Source: Phallusia mammillata
Taxonomy: Eukaryota
DNA length: 64,000 nt
Assembly: GCA_965637545.1 (NCBI GenBank)
Contig: OZ281496.1
Coordinates: 27,776,001-27,840,000 of the forward strand
Direction of reading: 5' to 3'
How positions within the stretch are numbered: the first letter of the stretch is position 1; the number at the start of each line of letters is the position of its first letter. The notes beneath the pieces were generated by a model. That model ran no database searches. It was given only the letters and a program-made list of their open reading frames with translations, and was not told where the DNA came from. Shown here one piece after another: positions 2,991-27,290 of the stretch. The position numbers and the translations under genes are program-made.

Positions 2991-3986
2991 AATTCCGGAC
3001 CTTTCGCTTTTTGTGTATTTTCTGTTGCGTATTGTGTTGTGTTTTTGCGCCAAATTAATAAATTTTTCTAAAGTGTTTCTTTTCTAACCCCAAGGTGGGA
3101 ATTTTGTATTTGACGATTTTGTAAACATTTTTTCCTTGTGCTTGATAAGTAAGCAACGCTAATCGGTAGTTTTTTTTAATTTTGTATTTCACGAAAAACA
3201 AAAATCATGTCCCTGGGATTTATTTTCAAATCAAAGTGCATGTGTTGTTGCATTGTTTTCACCCTCACCTGAGGAAACTGCGTTCTGTCTCTCTCTCCAC
3301 GCTCCAATTTCAACTTCCTTCAGCACGACAAAATGAACAACTTGTATTTCACGAAAAAACAAGGGTACCGCCCGTATCCTCTGATCCTCAGCAGCGACAT
3401 CCATCGTCGTATTTAACGGGGCCGTTTACTCGGTCACAGACAACCCCTTCTATGCAACAGACCCTGTAAATTGTATTTTGCGAAAAACAACACTCAAATA
3501 CACTTTGACAGCATCGTCGTATTTAGTAGACAGTCCACGAGATGGGGACATTTTAAGCACACTAAGTGTCACGACCTTAGCGAAAAAAACATGTCGTTTG
3601 TTCATTTATCGTCTATGAATTGACCACACAGCGCTAAGTAGCATCAGAGCTCCGTTACGAAAAAATAAGCAGTTAATATTTGACGGTAAATCATAGCTCG
3701 CACCTCAGACAAATTGAAGCTCTGTTACGTAAATTGAGCACCGACACGACGCGAGCGAATATATTACAATTTTAAACATAAACACTTAAAACAAGGCAAA
3801 GGGAAAAAGCATCACATCAGTTACAGCAAATAGTAGTCAGATTGGAGACAACATATAAACGCTAAAATGTTTGTGTTCCGTCACAGTAATTCATCTTCGT
3901 CCACTTCAGCTTTAGTTCTATTTCTGGAAAATAAAAAAGCAAAGCAGCTTCAGGACGTCATTAATGGCATCATATTTTACAAAACA

Positions 3987-4059
3987 TTTTAATACTATAA
4001 CATGTAAAGACAGGATAAGTGCACGTTTAAACTGCCTTTCCATGTTGACATTATCAAAA
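3987..4059 (-). ncRNA. Intronic pre-miRNA-like hairpin, copy 1
   Basis: Minus strand TTTTGATAATGTCAACATGGAAAGGCAG..CTGTCTTTACATGTTATAGTATTAAAA; long stem by manual pairing. Confidence 0.5.
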
Positions 4060-4785
4060 CAACAATTATATTCAAAATTGATGTATAGCAGTTAACATAT
4101 ACTTGCCTGCATCAGTTGGCGAAATTCAGCTGCGGTAGGATGAAGAGATCACCGTAGAAAAAAGTGTTTCCTCCAATGCTGTGGCAGTCCCTGGAACAGA
4201 AACGTAAAACGTAAGATCTCTACGAACTGCCCAAACACTTGAAATATCGCTGAAGGCGAAGCAGCGCAAGCAGAATGGTCTTCATCATTTAATTAATTAT
4301 AATTATTCATCATAAAGTGAAGGTAGCATAGGTAATATTGTTTGTTAAATTACCTGTTTACTGATGAATAAATCGATCCCAGCATTCTTCTTGTGAATGG
4401 AGAGGGCCTTAAGAGCGAAGTTTCTTAAACATATAGAAAAAAAACAGTTAAAGGCGATTTATAGAATGTAACTAAGAGATTGCTAACTTGCATTTAGGGT
4501 GGAGTTTTAGATGCAAACTGGACTCCTTAATGCCTTTGCAACCGCAGTTGTATTCTATGTTGTCAGGTGCTTCGTCGACACTGCAAAACAAACGTTTAAG
4601 CTTCTAGAAGCACATAAGCTTAAATACACAATGAGCGTATAATAATATTTACTTACATATGAAACAATTTCATACGATTTTCCCAATGACTGTCCCATCC
4701 AAAAATCTTCGTCCACTTCAGCTTCAGTTGCTTTTCTGTAAAATAAAAAGCAAAGCAGCATCAGGACGTCATTAATGGCATCATA

Positions 4786-4858
4786 TTTTAATACTAGAAC
4801 ATGTAAAGACAGGATAAGTGCACGTTTACACTGCCTTTCCATGTTGACATTATCAAAA
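4786..4858 (-). ncRNA. Intronic pre-miRNA-like hairpin, copy 2
   Basis: Lies within the 170-nt intron 4736-4905. ~33-bp imperfect stem with an 8-nt loop ACGUGCAC. Confidence 0.55.
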
Positions 4859-5516
4859 CAACAATTATATTCAAAATTGATGTATAGCAGTTAACATATA
4901 CTTGCCTTTATCAGTTGACGAAGTCCGCGGTTGGATGAAGAGATCACCGTAGAAAAAAGTGTTTCCTCCAAATCGATAGCAGACCCTGGAACAGAAACGT
5001 AGATCGTGAAATCTGTACAAACTGCACAAATGGCACAAACAAATCGCCCAAGGCTAAGCGGGGGGCATCCTAAATGGCCTTCAGCATTTAATTAATCATT
5101 TGTCGTAAAGTAAAAGTGGCATAGGCAATATTGTGGGGTAAATTACCTGTTTACTGATGAATAAATCGATCCCAGCAGTCTTCTTGTAAATGGCGATGGC
5201 CTTAAGAGCGAAGTTACTGGAAACTACACACACAAAAACAGTTATAGGCGATTTATAGAATGTAAATAAGAGATTGCTAACCTACATTTGAGGTGGCGTT
5301 ATAGACGACTACAAAAAAGCGTTTAAGCTTATGGAAGCACAGAAGTTTATAAAAAATGTTTACTTACATATACCTAACGACTTTCCCATCAAAACATCGA
5401 AGTTGTTTTTTCAGTTCCGTCACATCTTCGTCCACTTCAGCTTCAGTTGTTTTTCTGTAAAATGAAAAGCAAAGCAGCATCAGGACGTCATTAATGGCAT
5501 CATATTTTACAAAACA

Positions 5517-5589
5517 TTTTAATACTAGAACATGTAAAGACAGGATAAGTGCACGTTTACACCGCCTTTCCATGTTGACATTATCAAAA
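5517..5589 (-). ncRNA. Intronic pre-miRNA-like hairpin, copy 3
   Basis: Same hairpin; an A>G change converts A:U to G:U and keeps the pair. Confidence 0.55.
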
Positions 5590-6316
5590 CAACAATTATT
5601 ATCAAAAATGACGTATAGCAGATAACATATACTTGCCTTCATCAGTTGGCGAAATTCAGCTGCGGTAGGATGAAGAGATCACCGTAGAAAAAAGTGTTTC
5701 CTCCAATGCTGTGGCAGACCCTGGAACAGAAACGTAAAACGTAAGATCTCTACGAACTGCCCAAACACTTGAAATATCGCTGAAGGCGAAGCAGCGCAAG
5801 CAGAATGGTCTTCATCATTTAATTAATTATAATTATTCATCATAAAGTAAAGGTAGCATAGGTAATATTGTTTGTTAAATTACCTGTTTACTGATGAATA
5901 AATCGATCCCAGCATTCTTCTTGTGAATGGAGAGGGCCTTAAGAGCGAAGTTTCTTAAACATATAGAAAAAAAAACAGTTAAAGGCGATTTATAGAATGT
6001 AACTAAGAGATTGCTAACTTGCATTTAGGGTGGAGTTTTAGATGCAAACTGGACTCCTTAATGCCTTTGCAACCGCAGTTGTATTCTATGTTGTCAGGTG
6101 CTTCGTCGACACTGCAAAACAAACGTTTAAGCTTCTAGAAGCACAGAAGCTTAAATACACAATGAGCGTATAATAATATTTACTTACATATGAAACGATT
6201 TCATACGATTTTCCCAATGACTGTCCCATCCAAAAATCTTCGTCCACTTCAGCTTCAGTTGCTTTTCTGTAAAATAAAAAGCAAAGCAGCATCAGGACGT
6301 CATTAATGGCATCATA

Positions 6317-6389
6317 TTTTAATACTAGAACATGTAAAGACAGGATAAGTGCACGTTTACACTGCCTTTCCATGTTGACATTATCAAAA
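6317..6389 (-). ncRNA. Intronic pre-miRNA-like hairpin, copy 4
   Basis: Same hairpin sequence as copy 2. Confidence 0.55.
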
Positions 6390-7045
6390 CCACAATTATA
6401 TTCAAAATTGATGTATAGCAGTTAACATATACTTGCCCTTATCAGTTGACGAAGTCCGCGGTTGGATGAAGAGATCACCGTAGAAAAAAGTGTTTCCTCC
6501 AAATCGATAGCAGACCCTGGAACAGAAACGTAGATCGTGAAATCTGTACAAACTGCACAAATGGCACAAACAAATCGCCCAAGGCTAAGCGGGGGGCATC
6601 CTAAATGGCCTTCAGCATTTAATTAATCATTTGTCGTAAAGTAAAAGTGGCATAGGCAATATTGTGGGGTAAATTACCTGTTTACTGATGAATAAATCGA
6701 TCCCAGCAGTCTTCTTGTAAATGGCGATGGCCTTAAGAGCGAAGTTACTGGAAACTACACACAAAAACAGTTATAGGCGATTTATAGAATGTAAATAAGA
6801 GATTGCTAACCTACATTTGAGGTGGCGTTATAGACGACTACAAAAAAGCGTTTAAGCTTATGGAAGCACAGAAGTTTATAAAAAATGTTTACTTACATAT
6901 ACCTAATGGCTTTCCCATCAAAACATCGAAGTTGTTTTTTCAGTTCCGTCACATCTTCGTCCACTTCAGCTTCAGTTGTTTTTCTGTAAAATGAAAAGCA
7001 AAGCAGCATCAGGACGTCATTAATGGCATCATATTTTACAAAACA

Positions 7046-7118
7046 TTTTAATACTAGAACATGTAAAGACAGGATAAGTGCACGTTTAAACTGCCTTTCC
7101 ATGTTGACATTATCAAAA
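7046..7118 (-). ncRNA. Intronic pre-miRNA-like hairpin, copy 5
   Basis: Same hairpin; G>U variant near the apical stem. Confidence 0.55.
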
Positions 7119-7859
7119 CAACAATTATTATCAAAAATGACGTATAGCAGTTAACATATACTTGCCTTCATCAGTTGGCGAAATTCAGCCGCGGTAGGAT
7201 GAAGAGATCACCGTAGGAACAAGGTTTTTCCTCCAATGCTGTGGCAGACCCTGGAACAGAAACGTAAAACGTAAGATCTCTACGAACTGCCCAAACACTT
7301 GAAATATCGCTGAAGGCGAAGCAGCGCAAGCAGAATGGTCTTCATCATTTAATTAATTATAATTATTCATCATAAAGTAAAGGTAGCATAGGTAATATTG
7401 TTTGTTAAATTACCTGTTTACTGATGAATAAATCGATCCCAGCATTCTTCTTGTGAATGGAGAGGGCCTTAAGAGCGAAGTTTCTTAAACATATAGAAAA
7501 AAAAAACAGTTAAAGGCGATTTATAGAATGTAACTAAGAGATTGCTAACTTGCATTTAGGGTGGAGTTTTAGATGCAAACTGGACTCCTTAATGCCTTTG
7601 CAACCGCAGTTGTATTCTATGTTGTCAGGTGCTTCGTCGACACTGCAAAACAAACGTTTAAGCTTCTAGAAGCACATAAGCTTAAATACACAATGAGCGT
7701 ATAATAATATTTACTTACATATGAAACGATTTCATACCATTTTCCCAATGACTTTCCCATCCAAACAACTTCGTCCGCTTCAGTTTCAGTTGCTTTTCTG
7801 TAAAATAAAAAGCAAAGCAGCATCAGGACGTCATTAATGGCATCACATTTTACAAAACA

Positions 7860-7932
7860 TTTCGATACTGCAACATGTAAAGACAGGATAAGTGCACGTT
7901 TACACCGCCTTTCCATGTTGACATTATCAAAA
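7860..7932 (-). ncRNA. Intronic pre-miRNA-like hairpin, copy 6
   Basis: The 3' arm variant CATGTTGCAGTATCGAAA keeps or improves pairing (C:G, G:C, U:G). Confidence 0.55.
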
Positions 7933-9242
7933 CAACAATTATATTCAAAATTGACGTATAGCAGATAACATATACTTGCCTTTATCATTTGACGAAGTCC
8001 GCGGTTGGATGAAGAGATCACCGTAGAAACAGGTGTTTCCTCCAAATCGATAGCAGACCCTGGAACAGAAACGTAGATCGTGAAATCTGTACAAACTGCA
8101 CAAATTGCACAAACATATCGCTCAAGGCTAAGCGGGGGTACCCTAAATGGCCATCAGCATTTAATTAATTTTTTATTGTGAAGTAAAAGTGGCATAGGCA
8201 ATATTGTGGTGCAAATTACCTGTTTACTGATGAATAAACCGATCCCGGCAATCTTCTTGTAAATGACAAAAAAGGCCTTGAGAGCGAAGTTTCTGGAAAG
8301 TTTAGAAAAACACAGTTAAACGCGGTTTATAGAATGTAACTAAGAAATTGCTAACTTACATTTTAAGGTGGATGCAAACTGGACCCCTTGATGCTTTTGC
8401 CACCGCAGTTGTATTCTATGTTGTCAGGTGCTTCGTCGAACGACTGCAAAAAAGTTTAAGCTTATGGAAGCACAGAAGTGTCTAAAAAATGTTTACTTAC
8501 ATATGATAGATAGTGTTTCATACGATTTTCCCAATGGCTTTCCCATCGAAACAGGGTAGTTGTTTTTAATGCTTCTGATGCTCCGACAAACATCTGCAAC
8601 AAAACTGATATCAGAATTCGGGTTTAACCTAAAATAAGCTAAATACAAGATGTATAACTTCTACCTTTGCTGACCCAATATGCAAACCGCAGTGACATGC
8701 AAAACCGTAAGTGCAACATGCGAAGAACAAGAGGTTTGCTATTCGTTGCAGCAACGGAAAGAATGCCTGCATTGACACGCCTGTAAACAATAAAATTACC
8801 TTCAAATTTTTCGATGTTTTTGAGTTTTTGACGATTCCTTTCTTCTTGAACAAGAGTCACTGAAGAAATAATGCAATTGTAAAACTTTGGCCTTGATGAA
8901 GGCCAAATACAAAGCTTCAAAAATTATAGATTTGAAAAAAAACACAAAACTTACTGAGAAAGACTTGAATTGGTTTTTGCAGGTCTTCCCTCAACGCCAA
9001 CTTTTCTTCACTGCGTGTTACTAAAGAAAGAACGACAAAAGGAAACTTTTGGAAAAATACTAAGCAGCAAGAAAATAAATAGCACCTTGCAAGATCCGAA
9101 TGTGTATTAATTTCGCAGTTACTGAGAAATTATGTCTTGTCAAGATCCAAAGACGCCTGCTTCAGCTTTAGTTGTTTTTCTGTAAAATGAATATCAAAGC
9201 AGAATAAGGACGTCATTATTTGTATCATATTTTACAAAACAT

Positions 9243-9313
9243 ATTCATATTACAACATGTAAAGACATGATAAGTGCACGTTAAACTGCCTTTCCATGTT
9301 GACATTGTCAAAA
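9243..9313 (-). ncRNA. Intronic pre-miRNA-like hairpin, copy 7 (diverged lower stem)
   Basis: Upper stem retained, with several mismatches in the basal stem. Confidence 0.4.
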
Positions 9314-9971
9314 CAACAATTATATACAAAATTGACGTATAGCAGTCAACATATATTTGCCTCCATCGGTTGACGAAATTCAGCCGCGGTAGGATGAAGA
9401 GATCACCGTAGGAACAAGGTTTTTCCTCCAATTCGGTAGCAGACCCTGAAACAGAAACGTAGATCGTAAAATCTGTACAAACTGCACAAACATATCGCTC
9501 GCTCAAAGGTAAGCGGGGTGCACCCTGAATGGCCTTCAGCATTTATTTAATCATTTGTCGTGAAGTAAATGTGTCATAGGCAATATTGTGGGGTAAATTA
9601 CCTGTTTACTGATGAATAAATCGATCCCAGCGGTCTTCTTGTGAATGGAGAGGGCCTTAAGGGCGAAGTTTCTGGAAAGTACAGAAAAAAAAACAGTTAT
9701 AGGCGACTTATGGAATGGAACTAAGAGATTGCTAACCTACATTTAAGGTGGCGTTATAGACGACTACAAAAAAACGTTTAAGCTTATGGAAGCACAGAAG
9801 TTTCTAAAAAATGTTTACTTTCATATACCTAATGGCTTTCCCATCAAAACATCGAAGTTGTTTTTTCAGTTCCGTCACACCTTCGTCCACTTCAGTTTCA
9901 GTTGTTTTTCTGTAAAATTAAAAGCAAAGCAGCATCAGGACGTCATTAATGGCATCATATTTTACAAAACA

Positions 9972-10044
9972 TTTTAATACTACAACATGTAAAGACAGGA
10001 TAAGTGCACGTTTACACTGCCTTTCCATGTTGACATTATCAAAA
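9972..10044 (-). ncRNA. Intronic pre-miRNA-like hairpin, copy 8
   Basis: Same hairpin; the CATGTTGTAG variant adds a C:G pair. Confidence 0.55.
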
Positions 10045-13000
10045 CAACAATTACATTCAAAATTGACGTATAGCAGTTATACTTGCCCTTATCAGTTGAC
10101 GAAGTTCGCGGTTGGATGAAGATATCACCGTAGAAACAAATGTTTCCTCCGAATCGATAGCAGACTCTGGAACAGAAATGTAGAGCGTGAAATCTGTACA
10201 AACTGCACAAATGGCACAAACATATCGCTCAAGGCTAAGCGGGGTGCACCTTGAATGGCCTTCAGCATTTAATTTATTATTCATCTTAAAGTAAAGGTAG
10301 CATAGATAATATCGTTTGTTAAATTGCCTGTTCACTGATGAATAAATCGATCCCAGCAGTCTTCTTCTGGATGGCGAGGGCCTTCTAGCGCAAAGTTTTC
10401 TGAAAATTCTGAAAAAAAGTACCCTAAATGGCCTTCAGCATTCAATTAATCATTTATCGTGTAGTAAAATTGGCATGGGCAATATTATAGGAAAAATTAC
10501 ATAAAATAATAACGTTTATCCTAGACAAGTGTCTTGCCTCTCAAGTTTGTTTACCTGTATATAACATTCCAACGTATGAACCTAATTCCTTCTCGGCATT
10601 TGTTGGCTTCGATACAGGAGAAACGTTGATAAAGAAACGTCTGCAACGAAAGAATCAGGTTTGTACAAACATAATTAAGACTAAACTACAGTTAATTGCT
10701 TAGTGTTATTTATTTAATTGTGGAGATTTCAAACCATGTTGACAACCGAAATATCAGAATGTGACATGCCAAACATGACGTGCAACATGCCAAATCACAA
10801 TGCAAAAATAGAACATTTACTATACTACATGTCTGTCCTATCCTATCAGTCGCCGATTGTGCAGCCGATGCCGAAGTCAACACCAAACATACGTCTTCTT
10901 TGATCGCCCAAGTCTTCACCACGAGGTACTGCAAAAAAAATGGCATATAGCTTTCGGCCCATAGCAAACCAACACCAATGATAAGCTATAAAAAATACTC
11001 AAAACTTGGACATTGTAATCGAGAAACAAATTCAAAGACTCGACTTTTGCAGAAAAAAAGCAGTAAGTTTTCAATAAAGAAAATTACCTGATATTTTTCG
11101 CCGTATAACATCTGCTGTGGGCTTTTTGCATCACCAACTGTTTCACATCGTTAACTGTTCTTTGGCACAATTACCTAACGAAAAAATGACAGATAGCAAA
11201 CAAGCACGTACAAAAATTAAGCAGCAAAAATATGTATTACACAAATGACAGTAAACTTGTCATTACTGAACAAACAAAGAATTTATCAATTATGTGTACA
11301 CATTCTCATGAACAAAACTTACAGACGAGCTGGTGTGACTCGTTTTCGAAGTCTCTGATGAATGCATGCCTCGTTAGGTCACCATCAAGTTCGTGTGTAG
11401 CAAACGAACCTTTCTTTTCCGCTGCTAAGTAATTTTTGGTCGCCTCTTGCCGCCGCTTGTCGTCATGAATTACTAAAAAGGACTCTGATAAGCCCTGGTG
11501 CATAAAAACTTCAAAACTATACAATACGAAACGTTACAGTAAACTTACAGGGGAGATCAAATGTGAAGTCTTCCATGAACGCATGCCTTGCCAATTCCCC
11601 GGCTGCCTGTTGCCCAAAATCACACCGGTTTAAATTAAAGCAAACAAAACTTGTTTAACTCGCCTGTGCAGGTTAATGTTGGTCCGTCATCACAATAAAT
11701 CCAATATTGCGGCAGGCGAAAGGGATTTTTCGTGGAACCTGGAACAAAATGACCCAACTAATTTATCCAAACATTCCAAACAACTTTTTTGTATGCCGGT
11801 GCGTAAGCAACTTAGTGGCCACCCATGTTGATCTCTGTACTCACACCGAACAAGTTCGCTAATAAACACGTTACCTGCATCTTTCACGCTGTATATCATT
11901 TTCGATCGTCTCCAATAGCCAAGCCTTTTTCACCATGAGTTACTAAGGAAAGAATGACAGATTTATAGCCTAAAAACATATCAACCAAACACCAAAAAAC
12001 AAGCTAATACAAAGAGTAACAGTAAAAATTTCCGAAACTTTGCATTACAAAACAGATAAAACTTCCATTAATGTCTGGAAGATATTTAAAAAACCCAGTA
12101 ACACAACTTACAGGCGAATAATTACGTGATTTGGTTTAGCAGCTATATCAGACAGTCACTGATAAAGTGGTGCCTCGTCCTAACCTGCTAAGCTCTTGGT
12201 CAGCGCTCCGATATTCGAAGGTCCTGAAGAAAAATGAGCGTTAATTCGGCAGGACCCCAAGTTGAAACATTGTTTACATACATTTGTCACATACGGATAT
12301 GCATTGGTTTCTCCACTGCTCCTCCAAGTTTCGATAGATTCGAGTTTCGATGGACACAAATCTGCAACAAAACTACAGCAGAAATTGATGTACAAACCTA
12401 ATTACAATTAATTGCTTACTGTCCTAAAACACACGTGGCATGCAAAACATGAAGTGCAGCATGCAGAGCAATAGTGTTTACCATGCTGCAACTTATCGTT
12501 GTCTATGGTTCCGCAAATGTTTACTCCGTGAGACTTAAAAACCAGGTTTACTTAACTTTATCTGTTTGAAATTCCGAAGTATTTTCCCTTTTGGTCTCCA
12601 ACTATACGATCCATGTCTTGGTGCCTTCCTGTAAAAACAAAAACAAAAGCAGTACTAAAGTACGCAACACACATTACTAAATCTAACTTATTTATTATAT
12701 AATATATACGTATGTACTCATGCTCATGCTGACAACTCGTGTGACACGCACCATGCCAAATCACAATGGAAAATTAGTAGGTGACGTGTAACATGCCAAA
12801 TCCACATACTCTATTCGCCAATTATGGGGCCAAGTTTTTAGGCCGTGAAAAAATGTTACTTAACTTCATTCAGCCGGACTAAAATTTTCGTCTTGACTCC
12901 ACGCGACTCGCTGACTTCCTGTAAAACCAAAGCAAAATCAGTACCAAGAAACACAACACAATATTTGACTTAAGTGATACTATAAGTTTTGATTAACATG

Positions 13001-13601
13001 TGAATATATATGTAAACGATATACTATTTTCACATGTTTGTGACTGAATCTAAGCGGTTCAATGCAGGGATTGAATTTTTGAAAATACTCGCCTGCTCGA
13101 TTGTTGTAGCCATGTTTCTTTAATTTGACTGTTTAATGATTATTGGATGCACGAAAATCCAATCAAAACCTAAAACAAAACAATCCAACAGCTGTACTAT
13201 GTATTTGGGAAGCTACGCAAACTTATTTACTACATTTCAATCCGATATCGGTGTAAAAACCAAGTTTAATTTCACATCGGTCCCGACTAAATTTATTTTA
13301 CTTCGTAATAATGAAGTTACCTGCAGATCTCCTTCGCCCGTCCACTTCCGACACTTTTTCTTTTCCTTCCGCCAACAAGAACGTTCGCCTTCCAAACGTC
13401 ACGCGAGTGTTATTTACCCGTCACCAGTTTGTCCGCAGGAACTAAAAAGAATCAAAGTGACAAACATTAATTGTACAACTTCACATCTCGAACACCTTTG
13501 GACAGTGGTTTATGTTGTTCCTGACTTACAATAACAAGAGTAAATATAAAATTGTAAGACACGTATTAAATAAATTTTGCTAATAAATTAACTTTTGCTT
13601 G

Positions 13602-13668
13602 CCAACCTAAGGTTCGAACCTCAATCCTTAAATTCTTTGTACAGCATCTGTACCACTACACTGTGTGT
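13602..13668 (-). mobile_element. tRNA-derived SINE-like remnant
   Basis: Minus strand carries an A-box-like TGTAGTGGTA and a B box GGTTCGAACC; no complete cloverleaf. Confidence 0.35.
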
Positions 13669-14277
13669 GACAATGGTTAAACGTTCCCAAAGTTTTAGTT
13701 TTCTACGTTTAATTGCTGATAGCAGTTGAGGCAGTGGCAATGCAGATAAGTTGTGTCACTGACGGTTGTGGCTCAGGTTTTGTCTAAGAGGGGAATATTT
13801 TTGCTTTTGTTTTTAAGAAACTCACTGAACTATTTCTTTGTCTTTGTTCAGCACTGTTGCAGTGGTCTTTCCAAAACAGGTGGGTTTCTCCTGAAATTTA
13901 TTCAAATATTAATCATTGTAGGCTACGGACTGAAGGAATCAGTTAAACTCTTTGCATGTGATTTTAAACGTGTGAAGTTAAGGATATGTACACGTTAAAC
14001 TATCTTCACATGTTCGTTACTAAATTTAGGCGATTCATATTAGGTATTGAATGAAAATATTTACATGCCTGCTTGATTCTTGTAGTCATGTTTCCCCCGT
14101 TTAACTGTTGATTGATTATTGGATGCACAAATATCCAAACAGAACCTAACACAAAACGATCCAACATGCAATTAGGAAAGCTACGAAAATCTATTGAACA
14201 TATTGTTTTCCGGTATAGACACAGTAACACACAAGTACATCGATACCGATAAGTCGACTTAACCATAACGAAATCAC

Positions 14278-16440: not shown

Positions 16441-16623
16441 CAGTAAATCTCTGTTAACCTGGACACGTTTGGACCAAACAATTGTCTGGATTAGGTAAAG
16501 ATCCGGATTAATTGATGTCAATTACTTAAAGCCTTACCACATTAAAAATCATTTGTGTCTCGAGTTTGTCAGAATTAGGCGAAGATCAGGATTAACAGAA
16601 CCCGGTTTAATCGAGATTTTCTG
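16441..16623. mobile_element. Tc1/mariner (pogo/Tigger-type) MITE
   Basis: TIRs CAGTAAATCTCTGTTAA / rc CAGAAAATCTCGATTAA (14/17 match), flanked by TA on both sides. Confidence 0.7.
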
Positions 16624-16826
16624 TAGTTGCATCAGTATTAACTGAACTATCATAAATCTGTGCAGTTAAAAAATCAACGCACATGATAAAAAAAGGGTGA
16701 TTATGTCTGACACTGTGATTAAGACTTTTCAAACACAATCATTGACACAGCCAGCCAAAGCTTAGTTCATGTTGCAATTAATCATACAAAGTAAATGTTA
16801 GTTTTTGGTTTAAGGCAATTACCCAC

Positions 16827-18893: not shown

Positions 18894-19439
18894 CTACAAG
18901 TAAGTAGATTGTCAGTACAAGTAAAAATTTGCATAAGGCCTTTACATATGGATGCATAAAGTATAATGTCAATGCAATAGTTGCCAACTTTTTTAGGTAT
19001 ATTAGTCTTATTTAGTATATCATGGTTATAGCCAGGGTTGCCACACCATTCTCATTTATAGGATTTGTCCTTATTTCTAAGAAATGTCCTTGTATGTGAC
19101 TTGGGTCCTTATTTTGTCTTATTTTTAACAATTACAAAACTTCTATCTTGGTAAAATGACAGTCAAATCCCTGCTACAAGTAAAAGTAAACCCTTTGACT
19201 TAAAAAAGGTGACTTGAAAACCAGTTTCAAGCCATGCAATATCAGATAAGTAATCTATGCATTTTGAAATATTTAACTACTTTATGCATCCAATACATAT
19301 TATTTTTTAACAATATATATATGTATATGGTACAGATTTTATTTCTCAAAAACGTTGTTAGGGTCAGTGTACACGAAGTGCAGAATTTTTCTGGGCACAT
19401 ACACTCATGACATTTCACACGAAAATGCATTTTTGTGTA

Positions 19440-22400
19440 ACGTTTGATTTGTCCTGTAATTATTGGTAAGCGGTTACAAAAAAAATTGGGAAATCCTGTG
19501 TATGGTGAAACAATACTTTATGACATACGCACTGTTTGCACTAACCTGTTAAGGATCTGTGGGTCAAAAATCCCGACGATCCTGCAGGACAGCAAATGTC
19601 AAGGCTCTATAGGAAAATATTTAAAATTGGCGATGTTTATAGAAAATACTGAACAGGCGTTTCGTCCACCAGGTTGCATATTTAACAAATTTGTCGTTCA
19701 ACTGGTGTAATGCTGAACAAAATACGATGTTTGCCTGTCCTTGGCATGCAAAAGGATCATTATTCCAAGCTTGTCTACTTACATCTGGCATCTCTGATAC
19801 ACCGGACTCTTTCACAGCTTATGTAAGTTTCTATGCTTTGAAGAAACATTGAAGAAAAATCATCTAAATTAAACGTTTTGATAAAATGAATAATTTCATA
19901 CATTTGTGTGCCTGCCCTCTTGTGGTAGTTTAGGAAATTGAATTCCACTGTATTGTGCATTTCATAGGGATCTACGACCACAAGAAACAATTTTATTTGT
20001 CCGATAGAGAATGGCTTATATTGCCGTGTTCGGCAAGTCGTTTAAGAAAAACCCGTATATACCGGCCACTGCGGATAAAATGCTAAGCTTTGTGCAGACG
20101 TATACTAGTAACGCTGTTTCGCCCTAACCTGTGAAGGATTTAACTGTTGGTTATGAACAGTTAAATCCAATAAATGCTGAGTCAGACAGAAGTGACACCT
20201 TCTTCTGTTCTTGCTTTACTTCTTTTTTCACCACATTGGGCTTTGGTAGGGATTTTTTGCTTCTAAAACTTTGGAAGCCAATTTTTGGCCGCACTTTGAT
20301 GGGTCTGACTGGGTTTTTCCAACCTTTTCCTTGCTTTCATTTCTGAACTTTTATCACTTATTTTTGGTTTGTCAGTTTGCACAGTATTGCTTGTTTGCAC
20401 AGCACTGGTCAAAGTTTCTAAAGGAAAACATTAACGATAGTTATTCTCGGCATCCGTTGCTCAGAGATTGTTTACTTACATTTTGCATGTAAACACCTCA
20501 GTGACTTTTGTAGGTGCCAGTCCTTCGTCGAAACTTTGGTGAACAATCTGCAACAAAACATATAGCAGCATTCGATGTACAAACGAAACTGATACAAAAT
20601 AACGGTTAGTTATCGTTGCATGTCCTATTGTTAGAACACACGTGACATGCAAAAAAGTGCAACATGCCAAATTGCTGTGCAAAAAGTAAATCCTCATTTT
20701 TTTAAAAGTAAACAACTAGGTCGCTGTTTATGTGGCAAACCATTAAACTAAAAAAAGGTTAACTTAACTTTAATGGCTTCGTAGCCCGATCGTACTGCGA
20801 TTTTCCAAAGAAAATAAAAGCCCTTTTCTCGTCTGTAAGGTTTGATTTGTCCTGTAATTATTGGTAAGCGGTTACACAAAATCACTAAAATCCTGCATGA
20901 GCTGAAAAAATACTTTTATGACATACAGCAAAAGCTAACATTGTGCAGCCGTGATTGATATTTTTAGTCAAGGTTATTAGTAATCTGGTGCTGATTCCAC
21001 CAACCTTCCTAGGATTTGACTTGTTGGTCTAGGATCCCTACGATCTTGTTAAGTCATCACAGGTCCAAGTTTCTGAAGGAACACATGAGCGATAATTATT
21101 CTTGGCATGCGACAGAAGGATCGTTGCTCCAAAGTTGTCTACTTACATTTGGCAGTCAGCATATAACCAGATTTCCATGTGGCTTTTGCAGGTTCTAGTT
21201 CTTCGCAGAAACTTTGATGAAGAAACGCCTACAACAAAACGCAAAGCAGCAATCGTTGCACAAACCCAACTGACACTATACAACAGTTAGCTAGCTTCAC
21301 ATGTCTTATTGTGCGTACTAATATTCGGAACAAATGTGACATGTAAATCAACATGCAAACTATAAAGTGCAACATGCCAAGTCACCATGCAAACTATAAA
21401 GCTCGCTAAACTACAACTTAACAACTAGATCGCTGATTAAGTGGCAACCCAAAGCCATGAAATGGTAAAAAGTCAGATTAACTTAACTTCGATCGGTTGG
21501 AAGTCAGGCGGTATTGCAATTAGTGGGCTTTCTGCTGAAACTACAAGAAAACATACACTTTGTTTGTATAGCTTAGCATGTATGATTATTGGTAAGTTTT
21601 CTTACATAATAAGAAAATCCTGTTTATGCTGAAACAAATATTTTCACGACATACATCAAAAGCTAAAAATAGTGCAGTCTTAGTTATGAGCAAGATTACT
21701 GATACTGACTACTGTTGCACCAACTTGCAAAGAATTTGACTTGTTGGTCAAGAATTCCTACGATCCTGCAGGACAGCACAGGTCGATAGTTCTGAAGGAA
21801 AGATACAAAAGTAGCGATATTTAGCATTCTTATCGGCACGTGATAACGACATTTACTTACTACAAACATGTACGCATAAGAACCGAATTTTTCCACTGCT
21901 TTTGCAGGTTTCCATGTTTCGTAGAAACTCTGCAACAAAAAGTAAAGCAGCATTCGATGTTCAAACTTAATTCAGACTAAAGAACAATTAGTTGACTAAA
22001 GGTAAGAACACACGTGACATGCAAAACACAAAGCCAAATCAGCATGCAAAACTGAGATTCTGACGACACTACCACAACTACTAAAGTATATAAATCAACC
22101 CTAAAACCAAAGTTAACTTAACTTCAATCGGTTTGGCTCTGAATTCCGTCTTGGCTCAGCATCTGTCGAGGTCTATAGTGGAAAACGTTAGCGATAGTTA
22201 TTCTCGGCATGCGACATAAGAATCGTTGCTCTGAGGTTGTCTACTTACATTTAACCGTCAGCATATAACCGGATTGCTCCGTGGTTTTCGCTGGTTCCAG
22301 TTCTTCGTCGAAACTTTGACGAACATTCTGTAACAAAACATAGGGCAGCATTCGATATACTAGCACAACTGAGCCCAAATAGCAATAAGTTAGCTTCGAA

Positions 22401-25400
22401 TGCCTCACTGTGCTGAATAGTCAGAAGGCACGTGACATGCAACACACCTGGTGCAACATGCCAAATTGTAAATCTACTAAAAATTATCAACTAGGTCGCT
22501 GCTTATGCAGCCAACCCAAAGCCATGAAAAGTTAAAAAAAAACAGGTCAACTTAACTTCAATTGGTTCGAATTTAGGCCATTTTGCACCCATGTACTGCC
22601 CATTTCCGCGGAAACTAAAAAACATACATTTAGTCTGTATGACTTGACTTGTCCCATAACTATTGGAAATCTCCAGGGTCGATGACTTACATCTAACATA
22701 TCCGCGTATGAACTGCATTCCTCCAGTGCTTTCACAGGTTTCCATGTGATTTTGATCATTCGGAAAGTTGGTTAAGAAAAAATCCTGTATGTGATGCCCA
22801 CTGCGAAAAAAAAACTAATCATGTGCAGCCTTACTTATCTTAGTTTTGTCTTACATTTTGAGTCTACAATAGTGTCGCTGCTTTGTTGGTGCGAGATTCC
22901 TACGCTCCTGTAAGTCAGCAATGGTCGGAGTTCCTGAAGGAAAACATTAGAAATAATTACCCTCACTATGCGAAAAGGATTTGAAATTGTCTACTAACAT
23001 TTGGCGGCAAGCATGTAACCGGATTGCTCCTTGGTGTTTGCTTGTTTCAGTTCTTCGTAAATGTTTCCATGAACAAGCATCTGCAACAAAACCTACAGAA
23101 ACACTCGATGTACAAACCTAATTGCGACTAATGAACATTTAGTTAGCTTTACTTGATATGAAAACACACGTGACATGCAAAACAAGAAGTAGAACATGCC
23201 AAATCACCGTGCAAATCTGCAAGTCTCACCATACTGATTATATTTAACAACTAGGCGATTATGTGGCAAACTTTTTAAAAACCAGGTAACTTAACTTCAA
23301 TCCGTTCGAATTCGAAGTCAGGTCGTATTGCATCAATTAGTGCGCTTTTCCGCGGAAACTAAAAGAACAAGCGTTTTGTCTGCAGATCTTTGCTTCATAA
23401 TTTGCTAATACACTATAATCATTGGTAGGTGGTTACATAAAAAAATATTGCATGTGCTGAAAGAATACTTTTATGTCACACAGCAAAAGCCTAGTATTGT
23501 GCAGACGTAATTGCGCTAAAAAAAAACTCTATATTACTGGTGCTGTTTGTGACCTGTAACGGATATGACTTTTGGTCAAGGCTCTCCACGATCCTGCAAA
23601 ATAGATGAAAATTAGCGATATTTTCCTATCGTTGGCATGAAGCTCTTATCTATACTTACATTTAACACGCAACTAACCGAAACCCTCCATTACAGGTTGC
23701 TTTTCTTCGTAGAAACATCTGCAACAAAACGTAGAGCATGCTGCAGCATTCGATGTACAAACCTAATTGACACTAAAACTACAACTTTAGTTACGGTCAG
23801 AACACACGTGACATGCAAAACGCGATGTGCAACATGCCGAATTACCGTGCAAAATTTCGATTCTCAGCATACTAAGATTTAACAACTAAGTTAGTTCGCT
23901 TGTTGTGCAGCAAACTATATTTAATCTATAGAAAGCTAAAATCAGGTTAACTTAACTTCAATTGATTTGAAGTCTGGTCGAATTTCAGCAATTAGTGTGC
24001 TTTTCCGAGGAAACTAAAAAAACATTTGTATGTGGAGCTTGGCTACTAAGTCCTGTTTTGTTGAAACAATACTTTTATGACACATACAAAAAAAATAAAC
24101 ATAGTGCAGCCCAAGTCTAGATTACAGGCGCTGTTTGCACTAACCTGTCGAGGATTTGACTTGTTGGTCAAGGGTCCATACGATCCTGTAGGACAGCACA
24201 GGTCGAAAGTTCTAAAGGAAAAGATACACACGTAGCGATATCTAACCTTTTTCTCGGCACGCGACAACTACATTTACCTTCTACTAACATGTACGCATAA
24301 GACCTGAATTCGTCCAGTACTTTTGCAGGTTTCCATGCTTCGTAGAAACTCTGCAACAAAACGTAGAGCATGCTGCAGCATTCGATGTACAAACCTAATT
24401 GACACTAAAACTACAACTTTAGTTATGGTCAGAACACTCGTGCCATGCAAGTCACAATGTGCAACATGTCAAATTACTATGCAAACTATAATGCTCGCCA
24501 AACTACAGCTTAAGTAAGTGGCTGATTACAAACCCTGTAGGCTATGACAAAATCAGGTTAACTTAACTTTTATAGTTTGAAGTCAAAAGTATTTTCTCGT
24601 TAAGGTCATCCATCATGTCTAGATGTTTTCCTAAACATAGAAAATCAGATGAAGAGCTAAGAAACGCAATACGCAGTAATAGATCTAGCTTAGGTGTAAT
24701 CAACAATCGGAACACACGTGACATGCCAAACACATAGTGTAACATGCCAAATCGCCGTGCAAAACTGAAATTTGTAATACTCCTAATACTACATGTTAAC
24801 AACTAACTCTTAGTCGCCAATTAAATGGCCAAGTCATTACGAAGCGAAAAGCCTAGAAACCAAAGCAACTTAGCTGAATCGGCTTGGCTCAAAATTCCAT
24901 GTTGCATCTCGGATCTAAGCGACTGTTGTGGCGTTCGGAAAACAAAGACAAAGCAGCAGTACCAAGAAACACAACACAATATTTAATTTAATATATACTA
25001 TACGTTTTATATAACACGTAAATTTAGGATATTTTTACATGCCTGCTTGCCCGTTGTAGTTCAGTAAATTTTTATCATGTTCCCGGTTAATTAAATGTTC
25101 AGATAGCGGTTGAACCATCATTGAATGTCCGAAAGTACAAGAGAAACCTAAAACAAAACGATTAACTATCAACTAATTTGCTGTTGTTATATTTACAGGT
25201 TTTTATTATGCTTACTCATAGTAAGAACACATGTGCCATGCAAATCACGCAGTGCAACATGTCAAGTCACCATGCAAACTACAATGCTCGCTATACTACA
25301 ACTTAACAACTAGGTCGCTGGTTATGCGCAAATCGTAAGCCAAAAACAAACAAACAGGTTAACTTAACTTTTATCAGTTTGAATTCGAAGATGTTTTCCA

Positions 25401-27180
25401 GTTTGGTTCGCATTCGTGATTCGTTGCCTTCCTACAACAAAAGCAGATACAGAAGAAATAAAAGTAACAAGCAGTATTCTAGTATACTTCTAATATTTTA
25501 CAATCTAGTAGTTGGAACACACGTGACATGCCAAACATAAAAGTGCGCAAAATGCCAAATCAGCATGCAACACTGGAATTTATACTAAACTACAGTTTAA
25601 CAGCTAGCTCACGCGCCTAAACGTTTGCGGCGTAAAAAACTTAACTGAATTGGCTTCGCTTGCTTTCGTTTCAATATTTGCTCTAGGCAACTCTTGTTGT
25701 TATCCTGTAAAAACAAAGCAGAAGCAGGACCAGGAACAAAACAAAACATTTGATTTAATTTAGTATAAACTATACGTTTTGATTAACATGCGAATTCAGG
25801 ATATGTGCACGGTATACTATCTTCACATGTTTTAGCTTAATCTAGGCGTTTCGATAAGACGATTGAATATAAATATTTACGTGCCTGCTTGCTTACTGGA
25901 GTTCAATAGTTTTCATGTTTCATGTACTAACTCGGCGGCTTGGACGTCTTGGATGCAAAAGAACACCAACGGAACCTAAAACAAAACAATCCAGTAGCAG
26001 TTGTCGGAAGCAAACCTATACAACAATGGCATACTTATTGTGCCGGTGCGGAAGCCAACTGGTGTGCACCCAAGTTTGCTTCCACATCGATACGGATTAA
26101 TTTAATAAACAACAACAGAATTACCTGCATTTTATCTCGATGCGTTGACGAACAAACATCTGCAACAAACCGTAAGAGCAACATTCGATGTACGAATTTA
26201 TTTGAATATAACTACAATTAATTGACAAGTTTTATTCTGTATACTCCAATTCGGAACGCTCGTGACATGCAAAACACGATGTGCAACATGCTAAGTCGCA
26301 ATGCAAACTAGAATGCTCGCTATATTAAAACTTAACTTGGTCGCTGATTATGCACAAAAAAACATTAAGTCACGAAAAATCACGATTACTTAACTTTTAT
26401 CAAATTGCGTTCCGGCTTGGTTCTCCATTATGTCTTTTTGCTTTCCTATAAACAGAGAAACGTAAGCATAACCAAGAACCGCAATACACAGTATTACATC
26501 TAGCTTATATTAACAATCGGAACACACGTGACATGCTAAACACAGAGTGCAACATGCAAAAACATGCATAACTGGAAAATTATTATGAAGCGAAAAAACT
26601 ATGAAAAAACAAGACAACTTATCTCAATCGGTTTGGTTTGACTTCCATCTTGCATTTCGCATCATCTTGCATTTTGCGTTGCCTTCGAAAAAAAGAATAA
26701 ACAGTACCAACTAACACAAAACAATATTTTATTTTATTTACACTATACGTTTTAAATAACACGTCAAGATAGAATATGTGCAGTATACTACTATCTTCAC
26801 GTGTTTGAGACTAAGTTTACGCGTTTCATTGTATTGATTCATTGTAAATGTTAAACGTGCTTACCGGCTTGTGGGTTCAAGTTTAGTAGTTAGTTTCCAT
26901 GTTTTTAACTGTCAACTAGGCGGTGTAGGTTGAAACAGGCAACAAACGAAACCTAAAACACAACAATCTAGCAGTAGTACCATGTGTTTTGGAAGCTAAG
27001 CAAACTTTTGCAATATCAGCCTACATACAATAAGTATATAGACGCGAAAGCCAACTAGTGTGCACCTAAAATTTACTTCTATACATCCAAAGAAAACAAT
27101 TTACTTTACAACAAAAGAATTACCTGCATAGAACCCAGATGACCATCCACCAGCAACGCGAGCATCAAAAGAAAGAATGA
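19440..27180 (-). ncRNA. Putative multi-exon non-coding host transcript, right paralog
   Basis: Diverged ~300-700-bp exon-intron units. Exon lengths vary and junction-formed stops occur (T|AA, T|GA). Candidate first exon 27124-~27177. Confidence 0.5.
20634..26570 (-). other. Conserved intronic GCAYG/CACGTG element, right cluster (12 copies)
   Basis: Copies at ~20634, 21327, 22006, 22426, 23162, 23800, 24432, 24710, 25225, 25516, 26254 and 26520. Most lie ~75-100 nt upstream of a 3' splice site and downstream of a GTTAAGT-type donor. Confidence 0.85.
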
Positions 27181-27290
27181 CCGACCTCACACGCCCAAAG
27201 TGTGTAGCTTCATTTTTTCTTTTTTCTTTCGACCAATCACAACGCTTGTTGGCGACACGTTACACCAGCGCTTTTTAACCAACCAATGGC
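27124..27290 (-). promoter_or_regulatory. Candidate TCT/TOP-like start, first exon and CCAAT boxes
   Basis: Minus strand GGTCATTCTTTCTTTTGATGCTCGCGTTG...ATGCAG|GTAATT, with CCAAT at 27233 and 27283. Confidence 0.45.

What the first reader, a model, noticed from the sequence alone, without database searches (positions are those of the whole stretch)
3880..27200. Candidate C19MC-like system: repeated non-coding exons hosting a family of conserved intronic RNA elements
Seen: ~23 kb of related minus-strand exon-intron units (~26 element-bearing copies). Exons are 50-90 nt and drift in length and frame, while splice sites and one element in the equivalent intron are conserved. Two subfamilies are linked by shared exon ends (CAACTGATAAAG|GCAAG vs CAAACTGATAAAA|GTTAAG), acceptors (ATGCTGCTTTG..CAG) and the GACGAAGA exon core. 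Established: primate C19MC and snoRNA host genes (GAS5, SNHGs) use this design of disposable exons with functional intronic RNAs. Inference: this is a lineage-specific, expanding intronic miRNA/small-RNA cluster.
Basis: partly seen in the sequence, partly recalled or inferred. Interest (0 to 1): 0.85.

Follow-up and report, generated by a model that had tools for sequence, protein, structure and literature searches.

The report
Repeated non-coding exons with conserved intron motifs
A sea-squirt-like genome carries about 20 kb of repeated mini exon-intron units in which the splice signals and two short intron motifs are conserved while the exons are not, but the motifs look like splicing-control elements (one a cluster of Rbfox-type GCAUG sites, one a short stem-loop) rather than a microRNA cluster.

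Summary
The minus strand of 3,892-27,200 is a tandem or segmental array of short GT/GC-AG units. Exons drift in length and frame. Only splice signals and intronic blocks stay above shuffled identity.

There are two unrelated elements, not one family.
- E2 has 17 copies, plus one cut by the N gap. It is an unstructured block of about 60 nt with no covariation. Its most invariant columns are two GCAUG cores, with a third GCAUG/GCACG, UGGUGA and GUGUG. That composition matches an Rbfox-type binding module. It lies 67-119 nt after mostly GUUAAGU donors.
- H1 has 12 copies plus a remnant. It is a genuine 14-17 bp stem-loop with three compensatory pairs, in the middle of 171-183 nt introns that nearly all begin with GC. 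It is too short for Drosha/Dicer, has no conserved basal stem, and its loop is as conserved as its arms.

Rfam finds nothing. Four intact srGAP-type RhoGAP exons sit inside the reported interval, without the F-BAR and SH3 exons found in relatives.

The "disposable exons, conserved introns" design is supported. The miRNA-cluster reading is not. No expression data could be consulted. The scan had already noted H1, E2 and the GTTAAGT donors on this same stretch.

The parts
19545..27200 (-). Array B-hi. It holds diverged exon-intron cassettes (exon types 1-5 and X1-X3), 12 E2 copies, 2 H1 copies and 1 H1 remnant. It is contiguous with the RhoGAP exons downstream.
   Evidence: Reading of the sequence; alignment of 10 units; profile hits.
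27230..27290 (-). Two CCAAT-box-like motifs (CCATTGGTTGG and GTGATTGGTCG on the minus strand), 40-100 nt upstream of the first exon-like segment, which ends ATGCAG|GTAATTC at about 27,125. This is a possible promoter.
   Evidence: Read directly. Inference only.
26758..26805 (-). H1 hairpin, subfamily B. The only H1 intron with a GT donor (CCG|GTAAGC).
   Evidence: minimal hairpin -19.4 kcal/mol, z -5.2.
25785..25831 (-). H1 hairpin, subfamily B. Donor CAG|GCACGT.
   Evidence: -10.9 kcal/mol, z -2.0.
25010..25032 (-). H1 remnant. Only the 3' half is kept.
   Evidence: nhmmer E 0.031; reading.
13967..14014 (-). H1 hairpin, subfamily B. Donor CAG|GCATGT.
   Evidence: -7.1 kcal/mol, z -0.6.
12995..13038 (-). 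H1 hairpin, subfamily B. Donor CAG|GCGAGT.
   Evidence: -11.2 kcal/mol, z -3.2.
3999..10031 (-). Eight subfamily-A H1 hairpins at 9984-10031, 9254-9300, 7872-7919, 7058-7105, 6329-6376, 5529-5576, 4798-4845 and 3999-4046. Each sits in a 171-183 nt intron. The four introns measured (those holding 9984-10031, 9254-9300, 7058-7105 and 6329-6376) start GCAAGT or GCAAAT.
   Evidence: -16.8 kcal/mol, z -4.0.
20628..26580 (-). Twelve E2 elements at 26515-26580, 26249-26317, 25510-25581, 25219-25287, 24705-24773, 24427-24494, 23795-23863, 23158-23225, 22418-22476, 22002-22061, 21323-21401 and 20628-20691.
   Evidence: nhmmer E 5e-20 to 1.5e-11; alignment A1.
8681..14901 (-). Five further E2 elements at 14833-14901, 12736-12816, 12425-12478, 10759-10816 and 8681-8725.
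   Evidence: nhmmer E 1.5e-13 to 1.8e-8; alignment A1.
12550..26394 (-). Thirteen GTTAAGT donor-like sites that end an exon and precede an E2 intron. The first 14 intron bases are 83% identical between copies.
19783..19835 (-). Last X1-type exon. It ends ...ATGCCAGAT|GTAAGT. If spliced directly to R1 it opens the ORF MPDESGRSIPLVV... Including the following X2-type exon brings in stop codons.
   Evidence: Inference; no transcript data.
16827..18893 (-). Four RhoGAP-domain coding exons: R1 18789-18893, R2 17839-18007, R3 17506-17611 and R4 16827-16959. They splice into an intact 171-codon frame.
   Evidence: 97/83/70/84% identity to residues 484-655 of Ciona intestinalis F6TSN4, which has FCH + RhoGAP + SH3 domains.
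15525..15724 (.). Assembly gap. It has unique sequence on its upstream side and the tail of an E2 intron on its downstream side.
10500..15524 (-). Array B-lo. It holds diverged cassettes plus unique-looking short exons.
3892..10500 (-). Array A. The period is about 1.56 kb, made of two half-units of about 750 bp that are 84% alike. Units are 97.5-100% identical. Exons a, b, c and d follow in order.

Best explanation
This is a lineage-specific, still-amplifying array of minus-strand exon-intron cassettes. Their short exons are non-coding: either a long multi-exon RNA, or the leader of a chimeric RhoGAP transcript. Selection has kept the splicing signals and two intronic cis-elements that act on the host RNA. 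It has not kept small-RNA genes.

E2 is a single-stranded protein-binding module.
- It carries two or three GCAUG/GCACG sites plus UGGUGA and a GUGUG run.
- This is the composition bound by Rbfox proteins and their GU-binding partners.
- It sits 67-119 nt downstream of GUUAAGU donors and about 90-100 nt upstream of the next acceptor.
- It would therefore set inclusion or skipping of the neighbouring cassette exons according to Rbfox level.

H1 is a 14-17 bp stem-loop with a sequence-conserved loop. It sits at the centre of roughly 180-nt introns that almost always begin with GC. It most likely acts as a protein-bound or distance-shortening structure that helps or gates use of that weak donor.

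Shown:
- the array itself;
- the lack of a conserved reading frame;
- selective conservation of splice signals, E2 and H1;
- covariation in H1;
- absence of structure in E2, and its motif content.

Inferred:
- transcription and splicing;
- Rbfox binding;
- an effect of either element on splicing;
- any link to the RhoGAP exons.
For: Selective constraint:
- Between subfamilies A and B, exons and the rest of the intron sit at shuffled identity (0.55-0.60 vs 0.55-0.57).
- H1 (0.74 vs 0.57), the donor (0.71 vs 0.51) and the polypyrimidine tract with AG (0.75 vs 0.60) stand out.
- In 13 E2 introns the donor is 0.83, E2 0.72 and the branch/polypyrimidine region 0.69. Exons are 0.62 and other intron sequence 0.53-0.56. 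Shuffled values are 0.50-0.60.

Non-coding exons:
- Exon lengths are not held modulo 3.
- The longest spliced ORF in subfamily A is 92 codons, and exon d has stops in all frames.

E2:
- The invariant and near-invariant columns are the two (G)CAUG cores plus CAC.
- There is no consensus structure and no covariation.
- GCATG occurs at 3.2-4.3 per kb on the minus strand of the B arrays, against 0.3-0.9 per kb elsewhere.
- GGCATG, GCATGT, GCATGC and TGCATG rank 2nd to 5th among the enriched hexamers, after ATGCTG.
- 10 of the window's 12 minus-strand triple-GCAYG clusters lie in the array.
- Site 1 varies among GCATG, GCACG and other forms across copies.
- GCACG works as well as GCAUG for FOX-1, which uses several such sites in one intron (PMC7787662).
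- GU-rich motifs within 1-10 nt of GCAUG form Rbfox/LASR modules (PMC11874969).
- UGGUGA and GCAUGU are FOX2 CLIP hexamers (method section of PMC4234469).

H1:
- 14 pairs, 95.8% paired, against 30-62% when the partners are slid.
- Three pairs show compensatory change.
- G.U pairs occur only in the minus-strand reading.
- The loop is as conserved as the arms.
- Intron length is 171-183 nt in the eight introns measured, and seven of them start with GC.
Against: - No transcript, small-RNA or binding data were available, so even the splicing is inferred from sequence.
- GCAUG conservation in E2 could be a by-product of the weak CAUG:CAUG pairing, or of a DNA-level site. E2 also holds a CACGTG E-box and an octamer-like TTTGCAT.
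- The conserved E2 block is longer than Rbfox alone needs.
- Among the four subfamily-B H1 copies the 5' arm (0.93) is better kept than the 3' arm (0.69). That is also the pattern of a mature miRNA arm.
- All copies descend from one ancestor, so counts overstate independent events. H1 covariation rests on about 5 independent lineages.
- There is no obvious reason why non-coding cassette exons should be regulated or amplified.
- The array context is uncertain because of the gap and possible mis-joins inside repeats.
Confidence: 0.45

Rival explanations
1. Intronic small-RNA host gene. On this view H1, at least in subfamily A, is a short or non-canonical pre-miRNA-like precursor released from each roughly 180-nt intron. 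The exons would be disposable.
For: - H1 is a selected RNA hairpin.
- Minimal hairpins reach z -4 to -5.
- In subfamily A, an AU-rich lower stem of about 8 bp plus 17 upper pairs gives roughly 33 nt from base to loop, which is near pri-miRNA geometry.
- The 5' arm is the best-kept part among subfamily-B copies.
- Ciona has lineage-specific tandem miRNA clusters: 25 miRNAs in about 4 kb, absent from C. savignyi (PMC2884542).
Against: - The conserved stem is 14-17 bp in 44-48 nt.
- The lower stem is lost without compensation in copy 9300 and is different or absent in subfamily B.
- The loop is as conserved as the arms.
- With flanks, folding is weak: -15 to -26 kcal/mol, z -0.6 to -2.2.
- Two subfamily-B copies fold poorly, at -7 and -11 kcal/mol.
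- There is no Rfam hit at E<=5.
- E2, the majority element, is not a hairpin.
- The Ciona clusters pack a hairpin about every 160 bp and do not place one hairpin in each spliced unit.
Confidence: 0.15
2. Decaying tandem duplicates of fragments of a once-coding gene, or pseudo-exons in a large intron or intergenic stretch. On this view nothing functions today, and the conserved patches reflect recent duplication and gene conversion.
For: - Subfamily-A units are 97.5-100% identical, so their conservation carries no information.
- A 92-codon open stretch across exons a1-b1-c1 reads protein-like.
- Repeated peptide-like motifs occur in 10,900-12,000 (read).
- The RhoGAP piece lacks its F-BAR and SH3 exons in this window, which suggests a rearranged locus.
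Against: - Neutral decay or gene conversion should not leave motif-sized islands (donor, E2, H1, polypyrimidine tract with AG) above background while the sequence between them falls to shuffled identity.
- GT/GC and AG dinucleotides are intact in all 8 H1 introns and all 13 E2 introns examined.
- H1 shows compensatory changes.
- The five differences between exons c1 and c2 are all non-synonymous in the open frame, by my count from the sequences. So that frame is not under coding constraint.
Confidence: 0.15
3. DNA-level regulatory modules. On this view E2 is a repeated transcription-factor site cluster, combining the E-box GTCACGTG with an octamer-like (A/T)TTTGCAT, and the array acts as a multi-copy enhancer.
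For: - CACGTG and TGTCAC are among the enriched hexamers.
- The best-conserved E2 block, GCATGTCACGTGTGTTC, is longer than an Rbfox site.
- E2 shows no RNA structure.
Against: - E2 keeps a roughly fixed position between a conserved donor and a conserved acceptor.
- GCATG enrichment is strand-specific in a region whose other conserved features are RNA splicing signals.
- H1 shows RNA-type G.U-tolerant covariation.
- The strand argument is weak on its own, because all copies are direct repeats.
Confidence: 0.08

Closest known systems
Primate C19MC and rodent Sfmbt2/C2MC miRNA clusters (tandem units with non-coding exons and an intronic pre-miRNA)
   Same: Tandem, lineage-specific amplification of a unit. 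In each unit the exons are unconstrained and one intronic element is kept.
   Different: The elements here do not meet pre-miRNA structure requirements. The majority element, E2, is unstructured. No small-RNA evidence is available.
SNHG14 / SNORD116-115 arrays and their Fox-binding sno-lncRNAs at the Prader-Willi locus (PMC4234469)
   Same: Repeated non-coding exons, conserved introns, and intronic RNA rich in Fox (UGCAUG, GCAUGU, UGGUGA) motifs.
   Different: No C/D or H/ACA boxes were seen and no snoRNA family hit was found. So there is no evident way to stabilise the intron RNA.
Rbfox intronic splicing modules: multiple GCAUG/GCACG sites in xol-1 intron VI (PMC7787662), and GCAUG plus GU-rich Rbfox/LASR or ASD-1/SUP-12 modules (PMC11874969)
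   Same: Clusters of GCAUG and GCACG with an adjacent GUGUG, within about 120 nt of a splice site. The GCAUG cores are the most conserved columns.
   Different: Here the module is copied at least 17 times in tandem, next to exons with no coding content. Binding is untested.
Ciona intestinalis species-specific tandem miRNA clusters mir-2200/2201/2203 (PMC2884542)
   Same: Ascidian, lineage-specific, and produced by tandem duplication.
   Different: Those clusters are densely packed canonical hairpins (25 in about 4 kb) supported by reads. Here there is one short hairpin per 0.75-1 kb spliced unit.

Membership tests
Canonical animal miRNA precursor | Hairpin with a stem of about 33-35 bp: roughly 22-nt duplex plus roughly 11-bp basal stem | tested here: not met
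   The conserved H1 stem is 14 pairs, or up to 17-19 in single copies. The AU lower stem of subfamily A is not conserved in copy 9300 or in subfamily B. E2 has a 5-bp consensus helix.
Canonical animal miRNA precursor | Thermodynamic stability well beyond shuffled sequence, in the pri-miRNA context | tested here: inconclusive
   Minimal H1 hairpins give z -0.6 to -5.2. With flanks, z is -0.2 to -3.1 over 81-121 nt. E2 gives z -0.8 to +1.2.
Canonical animal miRNA precursor | Arms more conserved than the terminal loop | tested here: not met
   Between subfamilies A and B: 5' arm 0.70, loop 0.68, 3' arm 0.71. Among subfamily-B copies: 5' arm 0.93, loop 0.70, 3' arm 0.69.
Canonical animal miRNA precursor | Discrete reads of about 22 nt from both arms with a 2-nt offset | not testable with these tools
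   No small-RNA data are accessible.
Known RNA families (Rfam 15: miRNA, snoRNA, ribozymes and others) | Covariance-model match | tested here: not met
   0 hits at gathering score in the whole window. At E<=5 in 3,800-27,400 there were only two chance-level hits, neither on H1 or E2.
snoRNA host gene (GAS5/SNHG type) | Intronic C/D (RUGAUGA...CUGA with terminal stem) or H/ACA (hairpin-H box-hairpin-ACA) RNA | tested here: not met
   No conserved boxes in the H1 or E2 introns on reading the alignments. CUGA after E2 is present in only a few copies. No Rfam hit.
C19MC-like design (repeated non-coding exons plus a conserved intronic element) | Tandem units; exons without a conserved ORF; intron element under constraint | tested here: met
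C19MC-like design (repeated non-coding exons plus a conserved intronic element) | Units are transcribed and spliced as a host RNA | not testable with these tools
   Only sequence-level splice signals could be examined. The protein searches returned only genomic contigs of relatives.
Rbfox-type intronic splicing module | (U)GCAUG/GCACG sites within about 300 nt of a regulated exon, conserved above their flanks | tested here: met
   Two to three sites per E2. The GCAUG cores are the invariant columns. Enrichment is 4-5 fold and strand-specific. 10 of 12 minus-strand triple clusters lie in the array. The element lies 67-119 nt from the donor (coordinates).
Rbfox-type intronic splicing module | Adjacent GU-rich partner motif within 1-10 nt (PMC11874969) | tested here: met
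   GTGTG or TGTGT lies 4-6 nt after the third GCATG in 10 of 17 copies (alignment).
Rbfox-type intronic splicing module | Rbfox binding and Rbfox-dependent exon inclusion | not testable with these tools
   This needs binding assays, minigenes or knock-down.
srGAP-type RhoGAP gene (F-BAR + RhoGAP + SH3) | All three domains encoded at the locus | tested here: not met
   Only residues 484-655 of Ciona F6TSN4 map to the window. No F-BAR or SH3 match appears even at E 50. The relative locus L005 has them within 8 kb and 2 kb.

The most novel reading that the evidence does not exclude
The array is a dedicated non-coding 'Rbfox platform'. On this reading it is one nascent or intron-derived RNA carrying about 50 GCAUG/GCACG sites in at least 17 tandem modules. 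That RNA would titrate or sense the concentration of Rbfox-type splicing factors, as an invertebrate-chordate analogue of the Fox-sequestering sno-lncRNAs of the Prader-Willi locus. The H1 stem-loops would be a second, undescribed class of protein-bound or processed intronic hairpin. The evidence shows the motif density and the constraint. It does not exclude this reading.
Probability: 0.12. Interest if true: 0.8.

Novelty: new variant of a known kind. Interest (0 to 1): 0.45.

Why it matters
- If the units are transcribed, this would be a clear non-vertebrate case of a tandemly amplified gene in which the introns rather than the exons are selected.
- The conserved content would be splicing-factor binding modules and a stem-loop, not snoRNAs or miRNAs.
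- It offers a natural series of 17 diverged E2 copies and about 5 independent H1 lineages. These can be used to dissect what an ascidian Rbfox-type module and a GC-intron hairpin need.
- Ascidian embryos allow minigenes to be electroporated easily.
- The result also warns that 'conserved intronic element in a repeat unit' should not be read as a miRNA without a check of stem length and covariation.

Tried and rejected
1. Rfam, at gathering score and at E<=5: nothing relevant.

2. E2 as a hairpin. I tested the RNAalifold consensus and a hand-built 11-pair 'triloop' model. Neither shows covariation and neither beats shuffles. The 'pair-preserving changes' noted earlier by the scan (s1-375444) are therefore not supported.

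3. Coding exons. I spliced one full subfamily-A unit. There is a 92-codon open stretch and then stops in all frames. In the B-lo units I read by eye, reading frames starting at the conserved AACATG of exon 2 end after roughly 30-50 codons.

4. snoRNA boxes, hammerhead core and IRE-like loop in the H1 intron: looked for by eye, not conserved, no Rfam support.

5. Docking/selector (Dscam-type) pairing. The only reverse-complement-like match to E2 is a 3-mismatch site at 653-670 on the plus strand, which is chance level.

6. Cross-species conservation.
- Related ascidian srGAP loci (L001, L004, L005) hold the orthologous RhoGAP exons but no H1 or E2.
- Two JGI metagenome pattern scans found nothing.

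7. Transcript evidence through protein look-ups. Only genomic contigs of relatives were returned, or contigs with no DNA available.

8. Mapping the rest of the srGAP gene (F-BAR, linker, SH3) to the window: absent.


Full report
**What is there**

The window is eukaryote-like: GC about 0.37 and very few long ORFs. Earlier notes of this scan call the genome an ascidian, and one follow-up names Phallusia mammillata. I did not test the species. The RhoGAP exons in the window are 70-97% identical to Ciona intestinalis protein F6TSN4, which fits an ascidian.

On the minus strand, 3,892-27,200 is built from short units that look like exons flanked by GT/GC...AG introns.
- Subfamily A (3,892 to about 10,500) has a period of 1.56 kb, made of two half-units that are 84% alike.
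- Full subfamily-A units are 97.5-100% identical to each other.
- Subfamily B (10,500-15,524 and 19,545-27,200) is much more diverged and mixes several exon types.

**The gap**

- On the minus strand, the sequence just downstream of the gap (15,524 and below) starts with GTGTTCCG.... This is the tail of an E2 element and is followed by the usual acceptor region.
- The upstream side of the gap (15,725 and above) is unique sequence, 1.1 kb after RhoGAP exon R4.
- So the gap interrupts an E2 intron at an array/unique boundary. Continuity cannot be tested, and nothing below relies on reading across it.

**Two different elements, not one family**

Profile searches give 12 H1 copies plus one remnant and 17 E2 copies. 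All are on the minus strand, and none lies outside 3,994-26,580 or in related loci.

*H1*
- It aligns across both subfamilies.
- RNAalifold gives a 14-pair stem at -12.3 kcal/mol, with three pairs that change on both sides and stay paired.
- 95.8% of cells are paired, against 30-62% when the partners are slid. The number of cells with double changes exceeds all 500 shuffles.
- G.U pairs at three stem positions exist only in the minus-strand reading. These amount to about three independent events against one.
- Minimal hairpins fold at -7 to -19 kcal/mol, z -0.6 to -5.2.

*E2*
- RNAalifold finds only CAUGU:GCAUG, at -1.5 kcal/mol.
- A hand-built 11-pair model is 86% paired. It has no covarying pair, and 442 of 500 shuffles do at least as well.
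- Single copies fold no better than shuffles.
- E2 is therefore a conserved sequence, not a conserved structure.

**Where the constraint lies**

For H1 introns compared between subfamilies A and B:
- Flanking exons (0.56, 0.60) and the rest of the intron (0.55-0.56) are at shuffled identity (0.55-0.57).
- H1 is 0.74, the donor 0.71, and the polypyrimidine tract with AG 0.75.

For 13 E2 introns, 78 pairs:
- The donor is 0.83, E2 0.72, and the branch/polypyrimidine region 0.69.
- Exons are 0.62 and other intron sequence 0.53-0.56. Shuffled values are 0.50-0.60.

All 8 H1 introns and all 13 E2 introns examined keep G[TC]...AG. H1 introns are 171-183 nt long, and seven of the eight measured start with GC. 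In the eighth, a 4-nt GTAA insertion has created a GT donor just upstream.

Exon lengths are not held modulo 3.

Splicing one subfamily-A unit gives a 92-codon open stretch and then stops in every frame. The five differences between exons c1 and c2 are all non-synonymous in that frame, by my count.

**What E2 looks like**

- Its invariant and near-invariant columns are the two (G)CAUG cores plus CAC.
- A third site upstream varies among GCATG, GCACG and other forms across copies. UGGUGA lies next to it.
- GTGTG or TGTGT follows the third GCAUG by 4-6 nt in 10 of 17 copies.
- GCATG occurs at 3.2-4.3 per kb on the minus strand of the B arrays, against 0.3-0.9 per kb elsewhere. Four GCATG-containing hexamers rank 2nd to 5th in the enrichment list, after ATGCTG.
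- 10 of the window's 12 minus-strand clusters of three GCAYG within 80 nt are in the array.

Published work supports reading this composition as an Rbfox-type module.
- C. elegans FOX-1 uses several GCAUG and GCACG sites in one intron, interchangeably and in a dose-dependent way (PMC7787662).
- Rbfox/LASR recognises GCAUG together with GU-rich motifs 1-10 nt away, a pairing also seen in C. elegans (PMC11874969).
- UGCAUG, GCAUGU and UGGUGA are FOX2 CLIP hexamers (PMC4234469, methods).

E2 lies 67-119 nt after the donor, which is GTTAAGT in 13 cases, and about 90-100 nt before the next acceptor. Both positions are ones from which Rbfox sites are known to act (established knowledge). Binding here is inference.

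**Why H1 is unlikely to be a pre-miRNA**

- The conserved stem is 14-17 bp in a 44-48 nt hairpin.
- Subfamily A has an extra AU-rich lower stem of about 8 bp that would bring the total near pri-miRNA length. It is lost without compensation in the diverged subfamily-A copy at 9,300, and it is different or absent in subfamily B.
- The loop (CGUGCAC[A/U]UAUCC) is as conserved as the arms. This points to sequence-specific recognition of the loop.
- Folding with flanks is weak.
- One feature does fit a miRNA. Among the four subfamily-B copies the 5' arm (0.93) is better kept than the 3' arm (0.69). I therefore keep that rival at 0.15.
- Ciona does have species-specific tandem miRNA clusters, but those are densely packed canonical hairpins (PMC2884542).

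**Context**

- Exons R1-R4 (18,893-16,827) splice into an intact 171-codon RhoGAP frame.
- They match residues 484-655 of Ciona F6TSN4, an FCH/F-BAR + RhoGAP + SH3 (srGAP-type) protein.
- In a related ascidian contig (L005), F-BAR exons lie 6-8 kb upstream and the SH3 exon about 2 kb downstream. That contig has no H1 or E2.
- In this window no F-BAR or SH3 sequence exists in the 45 kb upstream or the 16.8 kb downstream. The upstream neighbours are ENPP-like genes.
- The sequence from 15,725 to 64,000 has no gap, so the B-hi array truly abuts R1.
- The last X1-type exon ends ATGCCAGAT|GT. If joined to R1 it would open the frame MPDESGRS....
- The array may therefore be the long leader of a chimeric GAP-only gene, or a separate non-coding gene, or the assembly may be mis-joined inside the repeats. 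I cannot tell which.

**Verdict**

The design analogy (C19MC, SNHG) is apt at the level of architecture. The specific claim of an intronic miRNA or small-RNA family is not supported.

My best reading, at 0.45, is a lineage-specific, recently expanding array of non-coding cassette exons. Its conserved intron content would be cis-acting splicing machinery: an Rbfox-type multi-site module (E2) and a stem-loop in GC-AG introns (H1).

Rivals are a non-canonical small-RNA host (0.15), functionless decaying duplicates (0.15) and DNA-level enhancer modules (0.08).

The most novel reading not excluded is a Fox-factor titrating RNA, like the Prader-Willi sno-lncRNAs (PMC4234469), at 0.12.

Noticed in passing
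window 692-2858: A 147-bp satellite with 14.7 copies and 93% matches. It is very A-rich on the minus strand and lies just downstream of array A. Each unit holds UGAUGA- and CUGA-like strings on the minus strand, but I saw no terminal stem and there is no Rfam hit.
   Followed up: partly
window 16827-18893 (minus): An intact srGAP-type RhoGAP domain in four exons, with no F-BAR or SH3 exons anywhere in the 64-kb window. Relatives (L005) have them within 8 kb and 2 kb. This could be a GAP-only partial duplicate, a chimeric gene or a mis-join.
   Followed up: partly
window about 35250-47000 (minus): ENPP-like (type I phosphodiesterase, PF01663) exon fragments that appear twice: near-identical peptides occur at 35.3/42.3 kb and at 38.3/44.2 kb. 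This suggests a tandem gene pair upstream of the array.
   Followed up: partly
window 62271-62534 (plus): A calcium-binding EGF domain exon (PF07645) on the opposite strand.
   Followed up: no
window 49487-49702: Two adjacent 112-bp copies, 86% alike, whose sequence looks tRNA-like (GGTTCGAATCC-type T-arm on the opposite strand). This may be a tRNA-derived SINE pair.
   Followed up: no
window 6126-6155, and the same place in each A1 half-unit: A perfect 11-bp inverted repeat with an 8-nt loop (TTTAAGCTTCT/AGAAGCTTAAA) in the intron after exon a1. It is degraded in the A2 half-units.
   Followed up: no
window 653-670 (plus): The only reverse-complement-like match to the E2 core in the window (3 mismatches), at the edge of the satellite. 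It is chance level, so it does not support a docking-site model.
   Followed up: partly
window about 389-405 (minus): The string GGTTTGATCCTGCCAGT resembles the 5' end of small-subunit rRNA. It is an isolated short match.
   Followed up: no
E2 introns, e.g. window 23730-23760 and 23880-23900 (minus): Further conserved intron blocks besides E2: GTACATCGAATGCTGC about 25-45 nt before the acceptor, and AGCGACCTAGTTGTTAAGT before E2. The short X1-to-X2 introns keep TGCCGAGAATAAYTATCGCTAAC, which contains a CTAAC branch-point consensus.
   Followed up: partly
L005 8500-9400: In a related ascidian srGAP locus, five GCATG sites fall in the last 1 kb before the exon orthologous to R1, against about 1.2 per kb overall. 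They do not form an E2-like block.
   Followed up: no
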